64,000 bases of DNA from Zygnema circumcarinatum SAG 698-1b (Eukaryota > Plantae > Zygnematophyceae). The notes below the pieces were generated by a model that was not told where the DNA came from, searched no databases, and saw nothing but the letters and a program-made list of their open reading frames with translations. The translations under genes and the position numbers were made by a program. Below are positions 44,252-61,723 of this stretch, one piece after another; within the stretch, counting starts at the first letter, position 1; every line of letters begins with the position of its first letter. The stretch is from the NCBI GenBank assembly GCA_037447605.1, contig CM074807.1, positions 2,986,327 to 3,050,326 on the forward strand, written 5' to 3'.

Positions 44252-47200
44252 TCAGTCAAGCAGCTTCGATACCACTCCAGCTCCCACTGTCCGCCCTCCT
44301 TCTCGCAAAGCAAATCTTTGACCTGCAAAAGCAAAAGATCAAGTCAATAAAACCGAGAGATTCGAGAAAACCCAGCTACAGCTGTTACTCCCATCTGAAA
44401 CACGAACTTAGGAACACTGCAACTTTAACTAAATCAGTGGCAGCTCATAACACGGTGCCCTTACCCGCATCAATGGCCACCGGCGTAATGAGTTCAAACT
44501 TGGCAGTCAGATTGTCTCCCGGCATCACCATTTTCACATCTTCTGGAAGATCCACCCGTCCCGTCACATCCGCAGTTCGCAGGTAGAACTGCGGCCTGTA
44601 GTTGGAAAAGAAGGCCGTGTGCCTTCCTCCCTCCTCCTTTGTCAAGACGTAAATCTCCGCCTCAAAATTTTTGGAGGTCTTGACAGTGTTTGGCTTGCAA
44701 ACCACCTGCAGCCAATGCCAACCCTTACTCTCAGTGTCAAAGATTCCCTTATCTGCGGCCTTTGCCAGCCACTGAGCAAAAAGCAGGAAATCATCTCCAC
44801 GAGAACATGTATTCCAGAATAGAAGAAAGCCATTGATAGGATAAAAGCAGCCCAGTCATTAAGTTTCCAGCTTTGTCCACTTTTGCTAATTCAACAAGAT
44901 AGCCATCAGCAATGCTCACCTGTCCGCGCTGAACGTCCTCTCTTTTGATACCACGCATAAGCAGACCCACATTATCTCCAGCCTGCAAAATGTCCTCTCA
45001 CCGCAGCCTCTACAAGGGTGTGAGCTTGCATCCTACTTGATCTCTATATCACATCACTACAATTTCACGAAAGGTTCTTTGGAGGCGTGTGAACTGGTAT
45101 TGACCGCACCTGGCCTTGATCAAGACTCTTCTTGAACATCTCCACGCCTGTCACTGTTGTCTTGATCGATCCAACCTGCAACCCATATGGAGGAATTGTA
45201 AGCATTTTACAAAAAAAGTTTTTCACGGAGGAGAAAAGAGTTTTTAGAACGTTCGTCCCAGTTGCTCCTCTCAAACCTTTCTTCCACGACAAAGTCTGAC
45301 AAAGCAAGATCAAGACACAAGGGTTGCAGTCAAGAGAAGCAAGAAAAAGCAAAACAGACGCAAATGCAAAGCAAAGCAAGGCTAAGCATGAGGGACTAAA
45401 GTATAAGCCGCGAAGCAAGATTGACTCCTTTCTACATACTGAGCTAGCCATGAGGCTCGCACACACTAGTACTCACCTTAATTCCCACAATCTCCACTTC
45501 ATCTCCCACTTTTACAATGCCTTGCTCCACTCGACCTGTGACGACCGTTCCTCTTCCCTGCCATAATCCAGCTACGTCCTTGTCAAACGAGAGCTATCTG
45601 AACCTTTCCTGAAATCTGAGTATCTCAACGGCGAATCAAAGCACTTGCGGAAATGCAGAGTCCTCCACAACCGTCATTTCGAAACGGTGACAGGTGGCAC
45701 GGAGAGCGGCCATGACACTGCCACAAAACATTCTCTTTCACGCACCTGAATAGAAAAGACATCTTCAATTGGCATCAAAAAAGGTTTTTCCAGCATTCGT
45801 ATTGGTTCGGGGATGTATGAGTCGACTGCCTCCATGAGCTTAAGGATTGCTTTCTTCCCAATCTCCTCGTTTGTACCCTGTAGAGCCGAAAGAGCTGATC
45901 CTCGCACAATTGGAATGTCATCTCCTGGAAACTTGTAGAAGGTCAAAAGCTCTGTGGAGTACCCAGGCCCCAACGTACACAATTAAATATACAAAATGCG
46001 CCTAGTGTTCAGTGCCTGCAGTCCACAATGTTTAATTCTCATGTGAGACATAGATTATCTTATAAGAATTTGTGCCAGGTTTGACAACCTGGTAAACTGT
46101 TCTGCAGTTAATGTACTCTAACTCCTCAAACACAGACCTCCCACATTATCCCCCCCTACCTCTCAACTCCATTTCAACAAGTTCAAGCAGCTCCTCGTCG
46201 TCCACCATGTCCACCTTGTTTAGGAAGCAGACAAGTGACGGCACACCTACCTGCAAGTCAATTCAATGCAGCAATTGTAAAGCATGTACAGCCTTGCACT
46301 GCAAAATCTCCGCCCATCGCCCCCTACCCCAAACACCCTCCTCCCCCCAACACAAGTCTACCCTGCTAAGAGTGGCTGATAATAATACATCATGGAATCT
46401 GTGCTCCCTTTGGAAATCAATATAAGATTAAGAAGTATCACCTGGCGAGCCAAAAGAATATGCTCCCTTGTTTGGGGCATGGGCCCGTCCGGCGCTGACA
46501 CTACAAGGATGCCCCCATCCATCTGCGCTGCTCCTGTGATCATGTTCTGTTCATTGCACCCCCAATCCCAGCTTCCTTGCTTCTGATCAGCTTCGTTTAA
46601 AGTTCTATTGTTTCGTCTATCTAAGGGTACACAGTTATATAACTCTTTACATCTACTTCGAGGCGAGATATCAAAGTTCAAGGACGAAGGGCCACCTTGA
46701 CATAATCTGCGTGTCCAGGGCAGTCCACGTGAGCATAGTGACGCTTGTCTGTCTCATACTCCACGTGTGCCTGCACCTCAGCTGCGCTCCCTCTTGCTTT
46801 ATCCACACCAGCAGATCTTCAGCTCACATACAACTTTGACCAGTGATCTGCAGTTTGGCGGTTTGCCAGCACTCAGAAGAGGCCCAGCAACAACCAGTCA
46901 CACTTGACGCATAACAGAACTCTCGCCACGTTGGAATCGGCACAATTCTCAATCAACTCGTGTGTACACGATCTAAAGGAAAGTCTTCTGATGTTCATTC
47001 AGCATAAATGAACATTCAGGTGTGCAGAGAGCGCGTTTTTCCTATGAATTTGGGCAGCTCATCGTCCTGCCATGTTATTTCATGCAAGCTGCCAAAAAGA
47101 AGTCCACTGCCACCGGCAAAGTAGTCCACGGGACAAGATGTGTTTTTGACTCCGAGACTGCTACCACGGCGTTGCAAAAAGGAATGGTTTCGCTCACTGT

Positions 47201-48370
47201 TGCAATAGTGATGCCTCGAGCTTTTTCTTCGGGGGCCTTGTCGATTTCATCAAACGCAATCGCTTTTGCCTTGCCTTCATCTGCCAAGACCTGCATAGAG
47301 CAGGATACACAAGTGCAACCAAACTGTTCAGTGCTACAACATATACAAAAACAATAACCATGATAAATGTCAAGATCCTAAGACGAATGATATGACCAGC
47401 TAGGGAGAGCTCTAAGTATAAAACAAGAGTGCGGAAGCGGAGAGTTTTGCTCCTAAATGTCTGTAATGCCAGGAGAAATACCCTTGTAATTGCGGCAGTG
47501 AGGGTTGTCTTTCCATGATCCACGTGTCCTATTGTTCCGATATTCAAGTGAGGCTTCCTGCAGGTGAATTCTCATGCCCGATGTTCAAAGTAGCTAAAAA
47601 AAATCATCATTTGAAAGGTCTAATCTAGAGCATGGGAAGCTTTTACATCGACGATATTTTTACGGTCCGTGGCACAGACCCCCAGGATATGAGGGTCATA
47701 AGGATGCAATTGTTCATGCTAGGATTTAAACCATAAACCCTTCCGGAGACGCATGACCACCGAAAGCCAGGAATTACTTTGAAACACCTGAAGAACGAGA
47801 CTTCTTCAGAAGGTTAATTTTGTCTAGGATCACCAATTTGTAACTTCAAATTGGCACTGAAACATAGAAACAAGCGCTCTCCGCCCATGGCGAATTTATG
47901 CCTTCAAAACAGCACACTTTAACTTCCAAAGTGTTGAGAATGAACCAAAAAAAAAACCATTCTGAAAACAGTCAAATGAAAACGAGTACGACAATGTCCT
48001 TCTTCTCCTTGATGAAATTTCCATCCCTCTAAATCCACACCAAGCTCGCTCCTGTGTGCTGACTCCAACCCTCCCTCCCTCCCTCTCCATCCTCACACCA
48101 ACACAACCTCCACTACTTTGTACCAAAAAGGGCAAACAAAGAAACCCTGGAAACTCACGTCCGTGTGAATGTAGCAAAGCCTCGAGCATCATGGCGATCC
48201 CAAGGAAGGAAGCCCACATTTGAACCCAAAGAGCTTAATCCAGAAACAGTTCCAAGGTCTTGAATAGCAGCAAGAGGAGGAAGTGGAGCGACTCTGGAAG
48301 ATGTTCCGACCGCAGCTTGCACTCTTAACCGACTGAAAAGGCGGCCAAGAGCAGACCTTCCGCAGGCCAT
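44252..48370 (-). CDS. TUFA: Mitochondrial translation elongation factor Tu (nuclear-encoded)
   Basis: Exon 48159-48370 encodes the presequence [19 protein letters not shown]...FATFTR. Exon 47482-47557 gives [24 protein letters not shown]. Later exons give [67 protein letters not shown], and the last exon gives [23 protein letters not shown]. Confidence 0.97.
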
Positions 48371-48768: not shown

Positions 48769-49245
48769 ATGGACGCCTTCTTAGAGAGACTTGCTCACAC
48801 GTGCCGTTACTATACGGGTTTCCCTCGCTCTCCCTGCACCGGAAATGTATATGATTTCTCATCGGAGAAGGATTTCGTGAGTCTCCTCTCGGAAGGCGCT
48901 CCTGTAGTTGTCGCCTTCACTGTGGAGTGTGAGCACACTAAGCATTTGGACAGGGTGCTCTGCGAAGCATCTGAAGAATGGCATCCCCGGGTGCGATTTC
49001 TTAGAGTAGAGTGTCCTAAGTATCCGGGCTTCTGTATTTCCAGACAGCGCAGAGATTATCCGTTCGTCGAAGTGTTTCAGAATTCGAGGGTGGTAGGAAC
49101 CGAGGAATCTGGAAGCGGAAGCGGAGGGGCGACTATCACGAAGTATACTGTGAGCGTCATCCCTTACACGTATGACGTGAGTACATATGGATTTGAGGAG
49201 TTTTTTAAGAAGCTGGGCATGCAGCCTGTTATGAAGCGTTCGTAG
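48769..49245 (+). CDS. Intronless thioredoxin-fold protein lacking CxxC (resembles the plant At5g57230-type family)
   Basis: Single 158-aa ORF. RYYTGFP...SEKDFVSLLSEGAPVVVAFT...KHLDRVL.EA..EWHPRVRFLRVECPKYPGFCISRQRRDYPFVEVF...YDVSTYGFEEFFK matches a conserved plant thioredoxin-superfamily protein as I recall it. Confidence 0.85.
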   Translation: MDAFLERLAHTCRYYTGFPRSPCTGNVYDFSSEKDFVSLLSEGAPVVVAFTVECEHTKHLDRVLCEASEEWHPRVRFLRVECPKYPGFCISRQRRDYPFVEVFQNSRVVGTEESGSGSGGATITKYTVSVIPYTYDVSTYGFEEFFKKLGMQPVMKRS

Positions 49246-50473
49246 GAGTGCTTCAGAATTGGGGGGTATAGTAGAGATAGAAAATTCCGTAGGTAAAAGT
49301 GGAGGAGCGTTCCTGATGAGCCACACAGTGAGCGGCACCTCTGCGAGTATTTGTGGGTTTCAGCAGTTGTTTCAGTAGCTGGAGTTGCAGCTACATCGTT
49401 CAGTCGACGGCACAGAACCGAAACCTATTTGCTCACAGAATATTTGACAAGTCAGGCTTGATGCCCATAGGCCAGCAAAAGAATTTTCTCGCATTCAACC
49501 AGTTTCGATCATCCTCTCACGTATTCATTCCACACTCATTTTGAAACGGAGTCTCATCCCACTTTCAAAAAGTTCTCTTTTGGCCCTGCGTGGGACGGGC
49601 CTTCTGTCAGGTCCGGGCTTTCTGGCAACATCTGCAGGGTGAGTTTGTCCTTCTGCTGCCCTTCAGCACTTCAGCTTCGGCTCTTCTCTTCTCTGCGACG
49701 CTGGACTGTAAACTTGGCTGTGCATTACTTTCTCTGCTGCTACTTTTTTCGCTCTATGTGTGCATTTCCGGATGCTTCAGGCCAGGTCTGCTGCTTCCAT
49801 GGCACTTTTTTACTCTGTTATCTAGTGTTGCTTAGTACGGCTACTTGGCCTCTCTAATTGGCTTTCCTCATGGTCTTTCCAAATGCAGCCATTCTCGGCC
49901 ACGAGGGGGCGATTTGGAGAGCCGCATTTAAAGGAGGAGAGATTGCTGCCTGCATGAAGATGATCTGGAGTAGTAGATGAAGGGAACAGGCTTGGCAAGT
50001 GAGTAGGACGGCATCCGACTCAAGAGTATAGGAGACAATGTATCGTCAGATATTAGATGAGATGCAAAAATCACGTTTTGTCCACCAAATTTCTCCAATT
50101 GCTTCATGTGCTGTATTCGATAGGGCTGCATAAAGTGGCAGGTACATAGGTTCTGCTGAAATGCCTCTGTTAATGGGCATCACATAGATGCACTAGGGAG
50201 AGAGTGAATCCATCATGTCCATATGAGGGGGAGCGCAGCTTAAATGAAAACCGCTATACAGACGCTGAATGGAAAACATGTTCGTCTTTATTTTTCAATC
50301 AATTTGCAAGAGGAATACGCTCAAGTCGAATAGTACCTATTTGATTTCCAACCTGTATTAAGAGGATTTATTTGACGAATGACGCTTGCTTACGCCCTAC
50401 GAGTAAAGCAGGAAGCTTGTGTCTACAAGCTCGTCCTTTTATTCTCGCAATATATTACTCTGCATTTGGTCGT

Positions 50474-53400
50474 CTAAAGGAGGTATCTGACTAGCAGGCC
50501 TAAAACTAGCAGCGGTGTGACTGGTCTCAGCAGCAATCGTCTCGACTTAGCCAGCAGCGATCCCTTCTTTACATTTGCGGCCTTTGAACTATTCATATCT
50601 GTTGCAGCTGAGTCTCCCCTATCGTCTGACTGTTTGCTATCCATTTCAGCGCATGACTCGTCTAACTTGTCACTATCAGCGAAGGCTTGCGCCTGCTCTA
50701 CAGCCTGCACTAAACCGCCTGCCTTTACATCGAGGTGAGTGTGTCCCGCACCTGCATTCTGCCACACCACGGGCTCCCATGGCATAGGCTGCCCCTCCAT
50801 TGCATGCACGCATGCGTCTGCGATAAGGGGCCGAACAAATCGTAACTTGGGGCCTGTAATCTCCATCTGCAACCAAGTTCCAGGAGGCAAGTAAAGGCTT
50901 CTGCCCGAATTTAGAAAATGGGGTCCTTTCAATGAGATGGGAGAGGGGAAGGAAGGGACAGGGAGAGAAGGAAGAAGGCGAAGGGTGGGGGGGAGGAAAA
51001 AAAAGAGACAAAAAGAGAATATGAAATTGTCATGAGAATTGAAAGATGTTCTAAGCCACAAAGAGAGCAAGCACTTTGCAAAGCAAGGAGAGCAAAGGTG
51101 AGCAAGGAAGGAAGGAAGGAATGTACCACAGTAGGATGGACCGAGTTCGTAAGAAGTGCTACAAATATATTGCGGTCAGGATCAATCCAAAGAGAGGTTC
51201 CTGAAGCGCAGAGCCAGACATAAATTCTTCAGCCCCTTGAGTGAAATCAACCCATGTTTAATTCCTTCACTGTCCGTCATTTCTGAGTAAAGCCTCGACA
51301 TTATGTCTAACCAATAGTCCGGCGTGAAGCATGTGGAACAAGGCATGGTAGCACAATCCGCGATTTTTTTTAAAATTTTTATGAGTCGTTGCTTCTTTCT
51401 TGAAATTTCCCGAAAGAAAAAGATGAATACTTTCACAAAGACCTACAGAGGAGTGTTTAATTTCGTCATGCCTCAGCCACGGACCTGTGAAGCCCGTGTG
51501 GCCAAACGTCCTTGGACCTAAGAACTGTCCCGCTGATGTATACCCATCTAAAGCGCGCCTAGCTGATACATCCCATCTGCACATAACAGACCCATTACGG
51601 CATTTGAAACCAGTAAGGACAGACCAACCACACGAAAAATGGAGCGAGCATAAACAGAATGTTGTCTAAGTTAAGATATCCTACACAACGTTATGCTACC
51701 AATAAGCGCATGAACAATTGGCGCCTGCATTTACAAAGGCATAAGAACCACCATGCAAACTGAAGCCAAGGAGCAGTACATTGAGATAACAACCACTCAA
51801 TAGCTTACCCAAGTGCAAAGGGTCGAGGATTTTCCGGTGTCACCGGTGCCTGTGTGGTGAAGAGCCGCAGTGTACTTTCCTTGAAGTATCGGCGTCCTGT
51901 CCGCAGGTCTACGCCTCCTGACAAAATCATTTGTGCATACTGCAACACCCCCCACAGAACAAACGCTGCTAAAAAAGTTTGTCTGGCTGTACTCTGACTG
52001 ATTTAAGGTTGCTCCTCCTCCCGCCACCTTTCAGAAATGCTCAATTGTGGAGACTAGTTCTCACAAAGAACATCTCTGATTTGAGGGCGCCCTCATGCTT
52101 CTTTCGTAGACATGCTCAGAAGTGAAATTGCTGACAGAGATGAAGCAGAAAGCTCGCTTAAAAAATTGGCACTAAACCTGGAATGTCATGGCAGACATTG
52201 CCAAGGCTGCAAACAATGATGGTAATTCAAGAACTTGTGAAGCAGACTGCCCTCCAGTTTTCTTAATTGCTGTTGCTTGAGAAGACAAAATGGAAACATC
52301 CATGGTGGGTATTCTGTTTCGAGGGTTGTTCTCAAACCAAGGAGATACTAAGGTCTGTTGTTTTCAGACCTTATTTCCTTCAGGTGCTTTCGGCACCAGA
52401 TTAGTCTGAATGCCAACTGCACTAATCAACAACTTCTTGTTTACTTCGACTACGACACACAGAAGTTAGAGGACGTATTACTTGCGACAATTAGCCAAGC
52501 CGAATTCTGATGCTACAAGGTTTCGAGCGGTTTTGAACGCATCCTGACTTCTGACATCTACGAACATCACGAAGTATGCCCTCCTTGTTGAAACCTTTAA
52601 CCAGCTTTTGCTGTGTTGCATGTGCTTGTATACCCAAAATATCTTTGTAGTAGTGCTTTCTGGAGTGTGCAGTCCCTTCGGACCAGTAGCGTGTTTTCCG
52701 ATCAGCACAATTCTTTCAATTCAATCAATTCTTTACCCACGAACACACATGAACAACTTGGATAAGAGAAGCTCACTCTAGAAACGTCAAGGATGGAGGA
52801 GAAGAGGCCTGCATGCCCAGCGATGCCGCCAAGGAGCCAGGAGGTTGGGTCATGCACTGCACGACCGAAACAACAGAGAGGTTAGTTATCGCGCTTTATC
52901 CTTTCACAAACCTCAACTTAGGCTATTGATTCTGGCACACATAGGATACTTTTCCCGGACACCTCATTAATCCTGTCGTCTTTCAATGTATTTGCGAAAA
53001 TGCCGTGGTTTTCCACATTGCCTAGTCATTCCCACTGGCCAAACAAGAGCAGGCACGAGTCTTGAACCTCTCTTTCGCTTCACTGCTATTGACCAGTAGT
53101 GTGTCAACAGGGGTCCGATCAACTTCTGCAGAAAGGCACAAACCTTCCCCCCATAGAAGTCGGCGTCGATGAACTAAATCTACTTCTGTTGGGACCACTA
53201 ATGGGTCAAAGTCGCAAAGTTCAAGTGGTCGAAAGCCTGTCTGCACCATTCCCAGCTGCAGTCGCCCAACCTCATTTCAGTTTTAGGATACTTGCGTTGC
53301 CAAACCATCCAAGTCACAAGCTGCAGCTGACAATGAATAATTTGTGCTTGACGAAGGTATAACCCAAAGAGGGACTTTAACACTTTTCAGTTGCCCGGTG

Positions 53401-56246
53401 CATCCTCCTTCCCGTTCAACTGAGGCTGAGCACTATGTGACAAACATTATGCGTTAAATTCATGAAAAATTAACAAGAGAATTTGAGCTCTCGTTAGCAT
53501 CCGATGTCTTACAACTACCATTCACATCCACCTTTATGTCCCAGTCACGTAGTCACTAGCTTATAGAGGACCATGCTCCTCTTGACGGACTCCAGAGTTG
53601 GTTAACTCACCGGTTTGTACAGCTCTCTCTCTACAAATTCTGCAAGAGGCCTCTTTGCCAGAGTCTCCACCACCAGGGCCAGAACTATCATGGAAAGGTC
53701 GCTGTAACGTGCTTGAGCCCCTGGAGGGTACCACAGCTTATCCTTGAGGATGAAGTCCATGACCTGCAGAGGCGCCCCATTTGTTGTCAAGAAAAGAAAC
53801 AAGCAGGATCTTAACAAACTCCTTGAATATTGAAAGGTTGGCCAGACATACATGCCAACAAGGGGCAGGAAACAAGTAGTCGAGAAAAGGAGAAAGCACC
53901 AGTTTCCTGTTTGATGGTGGGCTAACCTGTTCTGTGGTAGTGAGTCCCATATCAAAGAACGGGTGAAACTCTCTTAGGCCGGCCGTATGTGTCAGCAGCA
54001 TGCGTACAGTCACCTCCTGCTTTCCATTGACTCCGAATGCGGGAACATACGTACAGGCAGGCGTGTCCAGGTCTGCAGGATACACATGAGTGTGATTGGT
54101 AGGGTCAAGCCGTTACATCTCTTCCAGTGAATCCTACATCGAGAGAGTTTTGCTTTATCCAAAATAGAGAAGGTGATGATGCAGCAGTGCTTAATAGCAA
54201 AACAAGTATGCAGTTGCTAGGCAGAAGACGTTTACGGTTGCCAGCAGGTTTCTTTTACGAACACAAAGCCAGATAATAGAGAAATGACTAAACAAAGTTC
54301 TTTGTCTTCATCGAGTGTTCAATTCTTATGAATAAGGTCCAGTGACCTTCATCGGTTGCATTTAAGTTTACTTTAGCAAATGCTTGCGACTAGTTAGTTA
54401 CCTATCAGGCCTCGGTCGTATAGAATCATAACTGCAGGAACTGTTGCCATTATCTGCCAACAATTGCAATGGTCATAAGCCCTGTCAGCATTGGCGAACT
54501 CAGGACGTATCTGTTGTGCATTTTTCTCCATTACAAAAATCAATCTGCATTCTCCATGGAGGACATTCAGTACAGGACTACCGTTCACAAGGAAAGGAGG
54601 AATGGGAGATCAAAGACGCGGCAGTCTTACTTTAGTGAGCGAAGCAAGGTCAAAAATTGCACGAGAACGAACTGGCATGTTTGATTCACTGCAATTCAGA
54701 GATCAAAAAATTGTTAGCTCAAGTGCGTAACCATCGATGATTGAAGAGCATGATTGACCCTTCACTAAGAAGTTTCCTCGAAACTCTGTCCTACTCTGTC
54801 CTGCGCTAAACTAGATGGGCCAATCGTTTTGTTTATCCTTTTCTGGAATTTTAGGCTCCTCCAAAGTCCAGATATTGGTGAAAGAGGTCCAAAACCCATT
54901 TCAAGGTAATTTGAAAACCATTAAGAACTTGCTGGAACTTATGGGCACTCGGGGTGGTCAAGGATCCCAAGTGCAATTACATACTATGTGTAAGTCCCAT
55001 ATGCTGTGGTGAGTTCCTCCACATCCATGAACGACCACAAAAGGAAAACAACGCGTCATGTTAGTGAACGGGTGTAAGGTTCTACCATAAGAAAATATAC
55101 GGATGAGGTCGCCTAGATGCCAACCACTCCCATTCTCACGATGCATTGCCTTCAGGTTGAAACTGACAATGTAGCTGAGTCATTTTTTTCGCGACTCAGC
55201 ATGAATAAGCCTCACCTCGCAGCCTTACTCGCCACTAAGAATATCTTGCAAAATCTATGAGAGAGCATGAATCTGAGATGACTTCAACGACCCCTCCATT
55301 GCTCGTGCAGAGATTTCATGTGAGAAAAATGCGAATTTCCGACTTTTATATTTGTAAATGACTCCCAAGCCTGACTTTTAAGTCTCCAAAGAGGCTTCCA
55401 CAAGCATGCCGCAACCAAATTGTGAGATTAACATTTCAGACTCAAGCTTCTGTTTGCCCGTTAAGAATTGAGACAGAGAAGAGCATATGGTGTCCGACCT
55501 GATCCAGACTAGAAAGACCACAGACAGAAGAGGCATCCTGCTGATTAAAATGTAAATTCGAATCTCTTCAGCATACAGACTGGAATGATTCGCGGTAATC
55601 AAGCCGGTTTCAGCTAGACAAACCTTGATAAAAGCAGGGAATGCTACATCTGCCAAACGCGACTGCACCGCCAGGAAACACCCTCTCCGAAATGGCCTGC
55701 AGTAATGAACATATAATGAACGAATGAGCAAGTTTACATTCGGCCAAACAGGCTCCTTTTGTTTCAAGCTCCTTGACATCGTATAGTATGCAGGAGTTTG
55801 GCTAATGCCGACCACAAGCCGGCCTTAAGGATTCCAGAAGCGTTTTAAGAATTCCATTAATCTCGTGAGGCGGTAGATCCACCTCAAGCAGGAAGCACCT
55901 CACTTCAGTTCTTTGTTCGGGCACCTTGACATGATCGCGAACAGGTGATGATCTACTGCTACTATTGATCCCCGGCTATGCTAACTATTGCGGCTAATCT
56001 TAAACACAGGAAGATCATCTGCACACACTCTGCCCGGTTGCAGACTTCACTGAAACAACGTAAGCTTAATGGCGGCCAGGCTCCACCGTGACAGACTCAC
56101 ACCTTATGCATTATCTCACTGATTGTCAGACGATCGCCTCCCATCCGAATAGTAGAATCATTCAAGATCCCTTGGTGCATGCTGCTTTCAGCAAACATTG
56201 ACGGTACAGCCATTGGCTTCTCTCTGTACGCTGAATCCTGAACCAT
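50474..56246 (-). CDS. Serine hydrolase of the beta-lactamase/penicillin-binding-protein fold (PF00144-type), ~508 aa, C-terminal hydrophobic tail, 13 exons
   Basis: Exons: 56103-56246, 55624-55696, 54985-55003, 54631-54688, 54402-54453, 53927-54072, 53611-53763, 53144-53255, 52777-52856, 51809-51939, 51485-51576, 51127-51200, 50474-50866; they join in one frame. Motifs: AISERVFPGG, FDLASLTK (SxxK), RMLLTHTAGL, RYSDL (YxN-equivalent), GEVHDP, GHAGLFS, FGHTGFTGTSLWIDPD...LLTNSVHP. The start codon is the least certain part. Confidence 0.9.
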
Positions 56247-56599
56247 ACTTTAAACAAGCTGGTGCCTCCCTGCACCCTCCACGCCCTCCCTGCACCCCTC
56301 TTGGATGCCGGAGCGCGAGAACGCTTCTTCGCATCCCTTCCTAGCCCCGCCCCCACTCCACCTCCCCCTCCCCCTCCCCCTCCCCTCAGCTCTCTCCCCC
56401 ACCCTTCCCCCTCCCTCGCCGCTTTGAGGTTTGAACTGCGGCTGTCAGCGCCGGCCCGGTGAAACGGTCCGAGGAGCTGTCCGTACACAACCTCCCGGCC
56501 AATCACGAGCCACCACTCTATGTGCTCAGTGCTACCCGTCCCGTGTTACGAATCCCTGTTCAACAAACTAACGCGATTGGGCTCCATGTGACAGCGTTA

Positions 56600-57784: not shown

Positions 57785-61723
<3,939 letters not shown>

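What the first reader, a model, noticed from the sequence alone, without database searches (positions are those of the whole stretch)
50474..56246. Intron-rich, bacterial-type PBP/beta-lactamase-fold serine hydrolase with an intact catalytic set and a C-terminal anchor
Seen: 13 exons, including a 19-nt one, rebuild a ~508-aa protein. It has SLTK (SxxK), YSD (YxN position) and HTG (KTG position), plus the VFPG, GEVHDP, GHAGLFS and WIDP...LLTN motifs. It ends with a linker and a hydrophobic tail (LLLRPVTPLLVLGLLVRYLL*). Established: this motif set typifies bacterial PF00144 serine hydrolases, including the Bacillus peptidoglycan-recycling amidase AmiE/YbbE and similar domains fused to NagZ-like glucosaminidases. 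Mosses and several streptophyte algae retain plastid peptidoglycan genes. Inference: an anciently acquired (endosymbiotic or horizontal) enzyme that could recycle muropeptides or D-amino-acid peptides, or hydrolyse microbial lactams or esters. Caveat: I see no clear plastid transit peptide, so a tail-anchored, cytosol-facing topology is equally likely.
Basis: partly seen in the sequence, partly recalled or inferred. Interest (0 to 1): 0.7.

Follow-up and report, generated by a model that had tools for sequence, protein, structure and literature searches.

The report
Bacterial-type wall-recycling enzyme gene in alga
This is a real, expressed 13-exon gene of a conjugating green alga for a bacterial-type serine hydrolase whose closest bacterial relatives recycle cell-wall fragments. 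Green plants gained it once from bacteria, kept it from tiny green algae to Ginkgo, and added a membrane anchor at the tail, so it is an untested candidate for clearing fragments of the thin bacterial-type wall around their chloroplasts.

Summary
Spliced RNA contigs from two studies show 11 of the 12 GT-AG introns. The twelfth boundary pair flanks a 19-nt microexon that restores the reading frame and sits at the same place in Marchantia and Physcomitrium. All 11 internal exon lengths equal those of Marchantia. The 508-aa protein carries SLTK, YSD and HTG plus the YfeW/PBP4B-type signature, a roughly 100-aa linker and a terminal hydrophobic helix.

Orthologues occur from Prasinoderma and prasinophytes through streptophyte algae, bryophytes, a lycophyte and a fern to Ginkgo. 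None from an angiosperm ranked among the hits. They form one clade (100/99) joined to Rhodothermota-type bacterial enzymes (100/100), so the origin is horizontal transfer rather than the cyanobacterial endosymbiont.

Of the 80 nearest bacterial loci, 38 are fused to NagZ-type GH3 or NamZ domains, and 24 more lie beside such genes or MurQ. The best reading is therefore an AmiE-like MurNAc-peptide amidase, tail-anchored with its catalytic domain in the cytosol. The activity, the target membrane and any link to plastid peptidoglycan are all untested.

The scan has not met this gene on other DNA. Its notes report NagZ and NamZ homologues elsewhere in this genome; I did not check those.

The parts
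56247..56342 (-). 5' untranslated part of exon 1 (minimum extent)
   Evidence: RNA contigs run from 56102 to at least 56342-56350. An in-frame stop lies just upstream of the ATG.
56103..56246 (-). Exon 1, coding part (aa 1-48): short N-terminal lead, no transit peptide evident
   Evidence: Joint 55695>56102, cut +1. Canonical GT-AG. Orthologues have only 22-54 residues before the FPG motif.
55624..55696 (-). Exon 2 (VFPG motif, first strands of the domain)
   Evidence: Joints; translation.
54985..55003 (-). Exon 3: 19-nt microexon coding AYGTYTY
   Evidence: It restores the frame and has AG/GT flanks. It matches the orthologues. A 19-nt exon sits at the same place in Marchantia (L082) and Physcomitrium (L083). 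It was not resolved as its own joint in the RNA contigs.
54631..54688 (-). Exon 4: catalytic S95-L-T-K98
   Evidence: Joints; motif; these columns are invariant in alignment A1.
54402..54453 (-). Exon 5 (52 nt): helix after SxxK. It is skipped in some transcripts, which shifts the frame.
   Evidence: Joints 54072>54402 and 54453>54631, and the skipping joint 54072>54631 in X2-X4. The skipped form ends after 118 aa.
53927..54072 (-). Exon 6 (LLTHTAGL region)
   Evidence: Pfam PF00144 at 40.3 bits on this exon alone; joints.
53611..53763 (-). Exon 7: Y184-S-D motif
   Evidence: Pfam PF00144 at 35.7 bits; joints; invariant Y-S-D.
53144..53255 (-). Exon 8 (PTE motif, start of GEVHD). It is rarely skipped.
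   Evidence: Joints. The skipping joint 52856>53611 was seen in X2 only; the skipped form ends after 245 aa.
52777..52856 (-). Exon 9 (VHDP, GGIAGHAGLFS: subfamily signature)
   Evidence: Joints. The signature is shared with E. coli YfeW and the bacterial relatives.
51809..51939 (-). Exon 10
   Evidence: Joints.
51485..51576 (-). Exon 11: H349-T-G motif (GHTGFTG)
   Evidence: Joints; motif; invariant in A1.
51127..51200 (-). Exon 12 (WIDP, LLTN)
   Evidence: Pfam PF00144 profile positions 292-313; joints.
50537..50866 (-). Exon 13, first part: last conserved helix of the domain, then a poorly conserved linker
   Evidence: Joint 50866>51127. The linker is unalignable between orthologues. It has pLDDT of about 30 in the model of the Marchantia orthologue.
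50474..50536 (-). Exon 13, end: basic patch plus terminal hydrophobic segment (putative tail anchor) and stop codon 50474-50476
   Evidence: Maximum hydropathy over 16 residues is 2.14. The same feature is present in nearly all eukaryotic orthologues. The terminal helix has pLDDT 85 in the Marchantia model.

Best explanation
The stretch is an expressed nuclear gene of a zygnematophycean (conjugating) green alga. It encodes a 508-aa serine hydrolase of the beta-lactamase/PBP fold (Pfam PF00144, peptidase S12), in the subfamily of E. coli YfeW/PBP4B and the bacterial AmiE-like enzymes.

Shown:
- the 13-exon structure and its expression;
- an intact SxxK / YSD / HTG set, with 56 of the 59 positions that are strongly conserved in the bacterial subfamily;
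- a single eukaryotic clade restricted to green plants, nested beside Rhodothermota-type bacterial enzymes;
- a gene structure, including the 19-nt microexon, that predates the split of Zygnematophyceae and land plants.

Inferred with good support: a common ancestor of green plants acquired the gene once from an FCB-group bacterium. It lost the secretion signal or glycosidase partner seen in bacterial relatives and gained a disordered linker plus a C-terminal membrane anchor. The catalytic domain therefore faces the cytosol from a membrane that is not yet identified.

Inferred with moderate support: it works like B. subtilis AmiE. Ser95 would attack the amide bond between the lactyl group of MurNAc and L-alanine in soluble wall fragments (muropeptides), releasing the stem peptide. 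The most likely source of those fragments is turnover of the peptidoglycan layer of the plastid envelope, after they reach the cytosol.
For: Gene and expression:
- Eleven GT-AG joints appear in RNA contigs of four runs from two studies.
- The microexon and frame are established.
- All 11 internal exon lengths equal those of Marchantia, and the 19-nt exon is also present in Physcomitrium.

Family:
- PF00144 matches single exons and scores 205 bits on the Marchantia orthologue.
- NCBIfam's best match is PBP4B at 150-170 bits, far ahead of every other family.
- The protein is 30.6% identical to E. coli YfeW over 330 aa (E 2e-45), and they share DLASxTK, YSD, WG[EQ]VHD, GHAGLFS and GHTGxTGT.
- yfeW lies directly after murQ-murP.

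Link to wall recycling:
- Of the 80 nearest bacterial loci, 27 are GH3(NagZ-type)-hydrolase fusions and 11 are hydrolase-NamZ fusions.
- 24 of the 42 stand-alone genes have GH3, NamZ or MurQ within 6 kb. An example is the NamZ | GH3-hydrolase | MurQ arrangement in L045.
- AmiE is a PF00144 protein of the murR regulon (PMC10653849, Table 1). With NagZ and NamZ it degrades peptidoglycan sequentially (PMC8054146).
- The window protein keeps the bacterial consensus at 56 of 59 strongly conserved positions.
- The Cymbomonas orthologue carries a LysM domain.

Phylogeny and distribution:
- The eukaryotes form one clade at 100/99, and their union with the Rhodothermota-type group scores 100/100.
- Inside that clade the deeper branches among early-diverging algae are unresolved. 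Zygnematophyceae plus land plants (98/99) and the land plants (100/99) are each recovered, and branching within them is broadly as expected from the species.
- The window protein pairs with Mesotaenium at 100/81.
- Orthologues occur in Prasinoderma, Picocystis, Chloropicon, Cymbomonas, Mesostigma, Klebsormidium, Zygnematophyceae, liverworts, mosses, Diphasiastrum, Psilotum and Ginkgo.
- Prasinoderma, Chloropicon, streptophyte algae, bryophytes and ferns are reported to hold the peptidoglycan synthesis genes. Most seed plants and core chlorophytes have lost them (PMC7455551, PMC10784329).

Topology:
- The conserved basic patch plus 14-17 terminal hydrophobic residues, and the short N-termini, are shown.
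- The Marchantia model has a confident domain at 1-375, a disordered stretch at 376-478, and a helix at 480-493 with pLDDT 85.
Against: - No enzymatic, localisation or genetic data exist for any eukaryotic member that I could find.
- A cytosol-facing enzyme cannot reach polymeric peptidoglycan between the two envelope membranes. The model needs muropeptides to be exported to the cytosol, which is unproven.
- I could not obtain the B. subtilis AmiE sequence. Its place relative to this clade is therefore untested here.
- The orthologues fall well below NCBIfam's PBP4B cut-off (150-170 bits against 385).
- The terminal hydrophobic segment is short (14-17 residues), and in this alga an arginine sits inside it. 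Membrane insertion is therefore not certain.
- Some peptidoglycan-bearing lineages, such as Micromonas and glaucophytes, did not appear among the hits, so the co-distribution is not two-way.
Confidence: 0.5

Rival explanations
1. It is a DD-carboxypeptidase or low-affinity penicillin-binding protein, like E. coli PBP4B. It would trim terminal D-alanine from peptidoglycan precursors or free stem peptides rather than cut the MurNAc-L-Ala bond.
For: - NCBIfam's best match is the PBP4B equivalog model.
- The protein is 30.6% identical to YfeW and shares its signature motifs.
- HTG in place of KTG and a YS[DN]-type second motif are typical of S12 DD-peptidases such as R61, by established knowledge; R61 is among the fold matches.
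- PBP4B is described as a DD-carboxypeptidase (PMC5061867, reference 19).
Against: - The scores lie far below the PBP4B cut-off (150-170 bits against 385).
- The bacterial relatives nearest to the green clade are fused to, or sit beside, exo-glycosidases that act on the sugar end of muropeptides (NagZ, NamZ) and MurQ. That arrangement fits AmiE's place in the pathway (PMC8054146).
- The physiological role of PBP4B is itself unsettled, and its gene also sits in the MurNAc operon.
Confidence: 0.15
2. The chemistry is the same (muropeptide amidase), but the target is foreign bacterial wall. The enzyme would be a relic of bacterial prey digestion in a phagotrophic green ancestor, or a means of degrading microbial wall fragments that enter the cell. 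Plastid peptidoglycan would not be its substrate.
For: - Anaerobic bacterivorous ciliates are reported to have acquired pbp4b, NamZ, murQ and anmK by lateral transfer for wall-sugar catabolism (PMC13198582).
- Cymbomonas carries the LysM-bearing orthologue; by my own knowledge it is a bacterivorous green alga.
- The catalytic domain faces the cytosol, not the envelope lumen.
Against: - The gene is kept, with conserved structure and catalytic residues, in non-phagotrophic mosses, liverworts, lycophytes and Ginkgo.
- Its distribution follows lineages reported to keep plastid peptidoglycan genes, and it did not appear in angiosperms, which also meet bacteria (PMC7455551).
Confidence: 0.15
3. It is a general esterase, lipase or amidase of the beta-lactamase fold (family VIII carboxylesterase type) that acts on a membrane lipid, a secondary metabolite or a xenobiotic, with no tie to peptidoglycan.
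For: - The closest solved structures are esterases and acyltransferases: 6kjr, EstG, EH7 and EstB, at TM-score about 0.7 when normalised to the target (sequence matches).
- A membrane anchor would suit a lipid substrate.
- No eukaryotic member has been assayed.
Against: - Those structures are only 17-23% identical.
- Sequence relatives at 40-49% identity are the NagZ/NamZ/MurQ-linked enzymes.
- The subfamily-specific positions are almost all retained.
- The family is missing from eukaryotes that lack peptidoglycan.
Confidence: 0.12
4. It is a beta-lactam hydrolase that protects the plastid's penicillin-sensitive wall synthesis from microbial antibiotics.
For: It has the beta-lactamase fold with an intact serine nucleophile, and it occurs in lineages reported to keep the plastid peptidoglycan gene set, which includes penicillin-binding proteins (PMC10784329).
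Against: - It has HTG and YSD in place of the KTG and YxN of class C enzymes.
- The orthologues' scores on NCBIfam's class C model are 47-60 bits against a cut-off of 415.
- By established knowledge, moss plastid division is inhibited by beta-lactams, which argues against an efficient lactamase.
Confidence: 0.04

Closest known systems
[quoted passage not shown]
   Same: - Both are PF00144 serine hydrolases (PMC10653849, Table 1).
- The bacterial relatives nearest to the algal protein show the same partnership with NagZ, NamZ and MurQ, either as fusions or as neighbouring genes.
- This is the best model for how the algal enzyme works.
   Different: - AmiE is secreted and is encoded in an operon.
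- The algal protein has no signal peptide, carries a linker of about 100 aa plus a C-terminal anchor, and is a stand-alone nuclear gene with 12 introns.
E. coli YfeW / PBP4B (NCBIfam NF002968; gene after murQ-murP)
   Same: - It is the best-matching curated family.
- It is 30.6% identical over 330 aa.
- It shares the motifs DLASxTK, YSD, WG[EQ]VHD, GHAGLFS, GHTGxTGT and IDP.
- Its gene lies in a MurNAc-recycling context.
   Different: - The orthologues score 150-170 bits against a cut-off of 385, so this is not an equivalog.
- YfeW is the outgroup on a long branch in the trees.
- It is described as a DD-carboxypeptidase.
Rhodothermus marinus RmNag3 and similar GH3-GH3C-beta-lactamase-domain proteins of Rhodothermota and Bacteroidota
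   Same: The C-terminal domain of such fusions is the nearest bacterial relative of the green clade. Identity is 45-49%, and the union of the two groups scores 100/100. RmNag3 is an active N-acetylglucosaminidase that carries such a domain (PMC6987092).
   Different: Those are secreted three-domain proteins of about 980 aa. The green-plant proteins lack the glycosidase part. The function of the hydrolase domain of RmNag3 has not been tested either.
Uncharacterised plant orthologues (Physcomitrium LOC112274301, Marchantia Mp5g10020, Klebsormidium 'beta-lactamase', and others)
   Same: They are true orthologues: 62-67% identical, with the same exon structure, the same tail and the same catalytic set.
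   Different: None. The window's gene is simply the copy from a zygnematophyte that is not in the databases I searched. All of these orthologues carry placeholder names, and I found no study of them.

Membership tests
Pfam PF00144 beta-lactamase fold / MEROPS S12 serine peptidases | Profile match above the gathering score of 27 bits | tested here: met
   Exon 6 scores 40.3 bits, exon 7 scores 35.7 bits and exon 12 scores 18.3 bits, at ordered profile positions. The Marchantia orthologue scores 205 bits.
Pfam PF00144 beta-lactamase fold / MEROPS S12 serine peptidases | Catalytic motifs SxxK, Yx[ND] and [KH][TS]G, in that order | tested here: met
   S95LTK, Y184SD and H349TG, each found once. 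These columns are invariant across 20 eukaryotic and bacterial members.
YfeW / PBP4B equivalog (NCBIfam NF002968) | Whole-protein score of at least 385 bits | tested here: not met
   Orthologues P0009, P0004 and P0152 score 150-170 bits. PBP4B is the best family but the score is below the cut-off.
YfeW / PBP4B-AmiE-like subfamily (broad sense) | Shared signature beyond the catalytic triad: WG[EQ]VHD, GG.AGHAGLFS, GHTG[FW]TGT, IDP | tested here: met
   Shown in the alignment with E. coli YfeW and bacterial relatives. The window protein has the bacterial consensus at 56 of 59 strongly conserved positions, and YfeW has it at 47 of 59.
AmiE-type exo-MurNAc-L-Ala amidase | Genetic linkage with NagZ, NamZ and MurQ (operon or fusion) | tested here: inconclusive
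   The feature is met by the nearest bacterial relatives: 38 of 80 are fused and 24 more are adjacent. It cannot apply to a eukaryotic gene, and none of these genes lies in the window. Earlier scan notes report NagZ and NamZ homologues elsewhere in this genome; I did not check them.
AmiE-type exo-MurNAc-L-Ala amidase | Hydrolysis of the MurNAc-L-Ala bond of muropeptides that have a free non-reducing MurNAc | not testable with these tools
   This needs an enzyme assay.
AmiE-type exo-MurNAc-L-Ala amidase | Grouping with B. subtilis AmiE in a tree | not tested
   I could not obtain the AmiE sequence. The paper that describes it is not held.
Class C beta-lactamases | NCBIfam bla_class_C score of at least 415 bits; KTG and YxN motifs | tested here: not met
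   Orthologues score 47-60 bits. The motifs here are HTG and YSD.
Tail-anchored membrane proteins | A single hydrophobic segment at the extreme C-terminus, no N-terminal signal or transit peptide, and the bulk of the protein on the N-terminal side | tested here: met
   Nearly all orthologues end in a basic patch plus 14-17 hydrophobic residues, with 0-4 residues after them. Their N-termini are short. The terminal helix has pLDDT 85 and follows a disordered linker. Membrane insertion itself is not shown.
Plastid-imported peptidoglycan enzymes (Mur ligases, PBP, and others) | N-terminal transit peptide | tested here: not met
   Only 22-30 residues precede the FPG motif near the start of the domain in Marchantia, Klebsormidium, Picocystis and Diphasiastrum, and 54 in the window protein. 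No predictor of transit peptides was available.

The most novel reading that the evidence does not exclude
The protein is one leg of a complete bacterial-type, exo-acting muropeptide breakdown route (NagZ, then this AmiE-like amidase, then NamZ) that green plants took from an FCB-group bacterium. The acquisition may have come from one fused or clustered locus. The route would run on the cytosolic face of a membrane and dispose of, or recycle, fragments shed by the plastid's peptidoglycan layer. It would be lost together with that layer in most seed plants and core chlorophytes.
Probability: 0.25. Interest if true: 0.8.

Novelty: new variant of a known kind. Interest (0 to 1): 0.6.

Why it matters
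Plastid peptidoglycan in green plants is known almost entirely from its synthesis genes. What removes or recycles it is close to a blank. This gene gives a concrete, testable candidate:

- It has a conserved, catalytically intact enzyme domain.
- Its bacterial relatives are tied to MurNAc recycling by fusion and by gene order.
- Within the hits I could see, its distribution follows lineages reported to keep the peptidoglycan gene set.
- Single orthologues exist in the two tractable models, Physcomitrium and Marchantia.

Its cytosol-facing, tail-anchored design is unexpected for a wall enzyme. It suggests that wall fragments are handled outside the plastid.

It is also a clean case of an ancient bacterial gene transfer that later acquired 12 introns, one of them bounding a 19-nt microexon held fixed since before land plants arose.

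Tried and rejected
- **Twelve-exon model.** The model taken straight from the RNA joints (exon 2 joined to exon 4) was rejected. It shifts the frame and ends the protein after 92 aa.
- **Other microexons.** Mechanical rules (AG/GT flanks, right phase, no stop) give 57 candidate inserts. Only the one at 54985-55003 matches the orthologues.
- **Hornwort origin.** I first suspected a hornwort, from the neighbouring LCIB note and the roughly equal 62-67% identity to all land-plant orthologues. The trees place the protein inside Zygnematophyceae, next to Mesotaenium.
- **Presence in a haptophyte.** The 'Pavlova lutheri' row and the 'Pico_ML_1' row are nearly identical to each other and very close to Picocystis, so this looks like mislabelling or contamination.
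- **Cyanobacterial (endosymbiotic) origin.** No cyanobacterium appears among the best 80 genome loci or the 120 listed proteins. A deliberate test with cyanobacterial PF00144 proteins was not run.
- **Full-length searches with the window protein.** The spliced 508-aa protein has no reference, so I did not hand it to the protein database search (search for homologous proteins), the family libraries (Pfam, NCBIfam) or structure prediction. I used single exons and orthologues instead. The spliced protein was used only inside scripts.
- **B. subtilis AmiE.** The founding paper is not held and no route to the sequence was open.
- **Literature.** Searches for any study of the plant family found nothing specific. 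One genome-mining paper only mentions 'beta-lactamase' among HGT-derived genes it found in plant genomes.
- **Solved structures.** The nearest are only 17-23% identical, so they say nothing about the substrate.
- **NagZ, NamZ and MurQ in this window.** None is present.

Full report
**Observation**

The gene lies on the minus strand from the ATG at 56246 to the stop codon at 50474-50476. I laid assembled RNA contigs of four runs from two studies on 50400-56350. They gave eleven splice joints, all reading GT..AG on the gene's strand, plus unspliced pieces.

Joining the exons as seen left the N-terminal 72 codons out of frame with the rest. A 19-nt exon at 54985-55003, flanked by AG and GT, restores the frame and adds AYGTYTY. 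Mechanical rules allow 57 other inserts. Only this one matches the orthologues, which read [AG]-[YF]-G-T-Y-T-[YF] at that point.

I mapped the annotated Marchantia polymorpha and Physcomitrium patens proteins onto their own genomic loci. Both have a 19-nt exon at the same place. The Marchantia exon lengths are 48, 73, 19, 58, 52, 146, 153, 112, 80, 131, 92, 74 and 447 nt. After shifting three ambiguous cuts to canonical sites, the window gene has 144, 73, 19, 58, 52, 146, 153, 112, 80, 131, 92, 74 and 393 nt. All eleven internal exons are the same length, and all twelve introns are GT-AG.

The product is 508 aa. It carries S95LTK, Y184SD, H349TG, GEVHD, GHAGLFS and WIDP...LLTN, and it ends in a hydrophobic tail.

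**Family**

Single exons match Pfam PF00144 above its cut-off. The spliced protein has no reference, so I searched the representative library with exon 6 alone and then worked with the full-length orthologues it returned.

- In scripts, the spliced protein scores 582-592 bits (phmmer) and is about 67% identical to Spirogloea and Marchantia proteins of 494-509 aa.
- NCBIfam places the orthologues nearest to PBP4B/YfeW. The E-values are 1e-44 to 1e-50, against about 1e-17 for the next family, but the scores lie below the equivalog cut-off.
- E. coli yfeW sits directly after murQ-murP. It aligns at 30.6% identity and shares the extra motifs of this subfamily.
- B. subtilis AmiE is listed as a PF00144 protein of the murR regulon (PMC10653849). 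It is the exo-MurNAc-L-alanine amidase that acts between NagZ and NamZ (PMC8054146, PMC5061867).

**Bacterial relatives and their context**

A scan of one genome per bacterial species returned 80 best loci. Rhodothermales lead at 45-48% identity. They are followed by Ignavibacteria, Chitinophagales, Balneolales, Gemmatimonadota and Acidobacteriota. No cyanobacterium is among them.

- In 27 loci the domain is the C-terminal part of a GH3 (NagZ-type) protein.
- In 11 loci it is fused to NamZ.
- 24 of the 42 stand-alone genes have GH3, NamZ or MurQ within 6 kb, often directly adjacent.

Rhodothermus RmNag3 is a characterised example of the GH3 fusion, although its hydrolase domain was not assayed (PMC6987092). 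This is strong fusion and neighbourhood evidence that the bacterial subfamily works on MurNAc-containing wall fragments. The window protein keeps the bacterial consensus at 56 of 59 strongly conserved positions.

**Distribution and origin**

The word-index search with the Spirogloea orthologue, plus cluster look-ups, named orthologues in these taxa:

- Prasinoderma, Picocystis, Chloropicon and Cymbomonas (the last with a LysM domain);
- Mesostigma, Klebsormidium, Spirogloea, Mesotaenium and Closterium;
- Marchantia, Riccia, Sphagnum, Physcomitrium and Ceratodon;
- Diphasiastrum, Psilotum and Ginkgo.

No protein named as angiosperm, core chlorophyte, red alga or glaucophyte is among the 120 listed, although bacterial hits down to 38-40% identity are. 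Unnamed clusters exist, so this absence is likely rather than proven.

A careful maximum-likelihood tree of 75 rows gives the following (the 132-row quick tree agrees):

- one eukaryotic clade (ultrafast bootstrap 100, SH-aLRT 99);
- that clade joined to the Rhodothermota-dominated group (100/100);
- inside that clade, unresolved deeper branches among the early-diverging algae, but Zygnematophyceae plus land plants (98/99) and the land plants (100/99) each recovered;
- the window protein paired with Mesotaenium (100/81), within the group that also holds the other Zygnematophyceae (90/51).

So the source genome is a conjugating green alga. The gene entered the green lineage once, before its three phyla split, from an FCB-group-like donor.

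Published surveys report the full peptidoglycan gene set in Prasinoderma, Chloropicon, streptophyte algae, bryophytes and ferns, and its loss in most seed plants and core chlorophytes (PMC7455551, PMC10784329). The match with the present family is suggestive. It is one-way, and I did not test it statistically.

**Architecture**

The model of the Marchantia orthologue has a confident catalytic domain at residues 1-375. A stretch of about 100 residues with pLDDT near 30 follows, and then a terminal helix at 480-493 with pLDDT 85.

Nearly every full-length orthologue ends in a basic patch followed by 14-17 hydrophobic residues, with 0-4 residues after them. The linker between the domain and the tail cannot be aligned between orthologues. 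Only 22-54 residues precede the domain in most orthologues.

This is the layout of a tail-anchored protein whose catalytic domain faces the cytosol. The bacterial relatives, in contrast, are secreted, lipoprotein-like or periplasmic (PMC6987092, PMC8054146). I cannot say which membrane receives the anchor.

**Mechanism and rivals**

The reading best supported is an AmiE-like amidase that removes stem peptides from soluble MurNAc-peptides in the cytosol. The likeliest source of those peptides is plastid wall turnover. I give the whole chain 0.5. Within it:

- gene, family, single bacterial origin and vertical descent: above 0.9;
- tail-anchored, cytosol-facing topology: about 0.7;
- MurNAc-peptide amidase chemistry: about 0.5;
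- plastid source of the substrate: lower still.

The rivals are a DD-carboxypeptidase like PBP4B, the same chemistry aimed at foreign bacterial wall, a general esterase, and a lactamase. The foreign-wall rival has a parallel in ciliates, which took up pbp4b, NamZ and murQ by lateral transfer (PMC13198582). The esterase rival rests on solved structures that are only 17-23% identical.

**Context from the scan**

Earlier notes on the same genome describe homologues of NamZ (followed up) and NagZ (first reading only). They also describe leaderless NlpC/P60 and LysM-lysozyme genes. I did not test them, and they count as leads only. If they hold, the alga would have all three exo-acting enzymes of the B. 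subtilis route.

**Novelty**

The bacterial family is known, and the plant orthologues already sit in databases under placeholder names. I found no paper on them. What is new is the recognition that green plants carry a tail-anchored, cytosol-facing version of a wall-recycling enzyme, with a distribution that resembles that of plastid peptidoglycan. I rate it a new variant of a known kind, with interest 0.6.

Noticed in passing
window 54402-54453 (exon 5) and 53144-53255 (exon 8): There are exon-skipping transcripts. The joint 54072>54631, which skips the 52-nt exon 5, was assembled in three of four runs. The joint 52856>53611, which skips exon 8, was assembled in one run. Both shift the frame and would end the protein after 118 or 245 aa. 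This may be unproductive splicing, but contigs cannot show how common it is.
   Followed up: partly
window 48769-49245 (+) and 48978-50473: RNA contigs that cover the last exon run on for about 1.4 kb past the stop codon towards a convergent, intron-less 158-aa ORF that looks thioredoxin-like by eye. This means either a long 3' UTR or overlapping 3' ends of two genes.
   Followed up: no
window 46358-47547 (-) and 57785-60532 (-): By eye, the neighbouring ORF fragments look like an organellar EF-Tu-type GTPase (GHVDHGKTT and related motifs) and an aspartate aminotransferase. This is an ordinary nuclear gene neighbourhood with no other wall-related gene.
   Followed up: no
L082 (Marchantia) and L083 (Physcomitrium) against window 50474-56246: All 11 internal exon lengths are identical between the alga and Marchantia. 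In Physcomitrium the first two exons are merged and exon 7 is 3 nt shorter. The 19-nt microexon differs at 5 of 19 bases in Marchantia and at 6 of 19 in Physcomitrium.
   Followed up: yes
proteins P0167 ('Pavlova lutheri') and P0172 ('Pico_ML_1'): These two public entries are almost identical to each other and very close to Picocystis salinarum in the tree. The haptophyte label is probably contamination or mislabelling. I take Pico_ML_1 to be a Picocystis strain, from my own knowledge of the name.
   Followed up: partly
protein P0166 (Cymbomonas tetramitiformis), residues 456-497: The orthologue of this prasinophyte carries a LysM domain after the catalytic domain. That fits a GlcNAc/MurNAc-glycan substrate.
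   Followed up: partly
window 56290-56420 and 50930-51010: There is a C/T-rich low-complexity tract just upstream of, and within, the 5' end of the transcript, and a purine-rich tract inside the last intron.
   Followed up: no
window 52117: One run (X3) reads A instead of C inside intron 9. This is a likely strain or allele difference.
   Followed up: no
loci L018, L023, L031, L045, L048, L058 (Acidobacteriota): These loci share a recurrent compact arrangement: NamZ on the opposite strand, then a GH3-hydrolase fusion, then MurQ. Other Acidobacteriota instead have hydrolase-NamZ fusions.
   Followed up: partly
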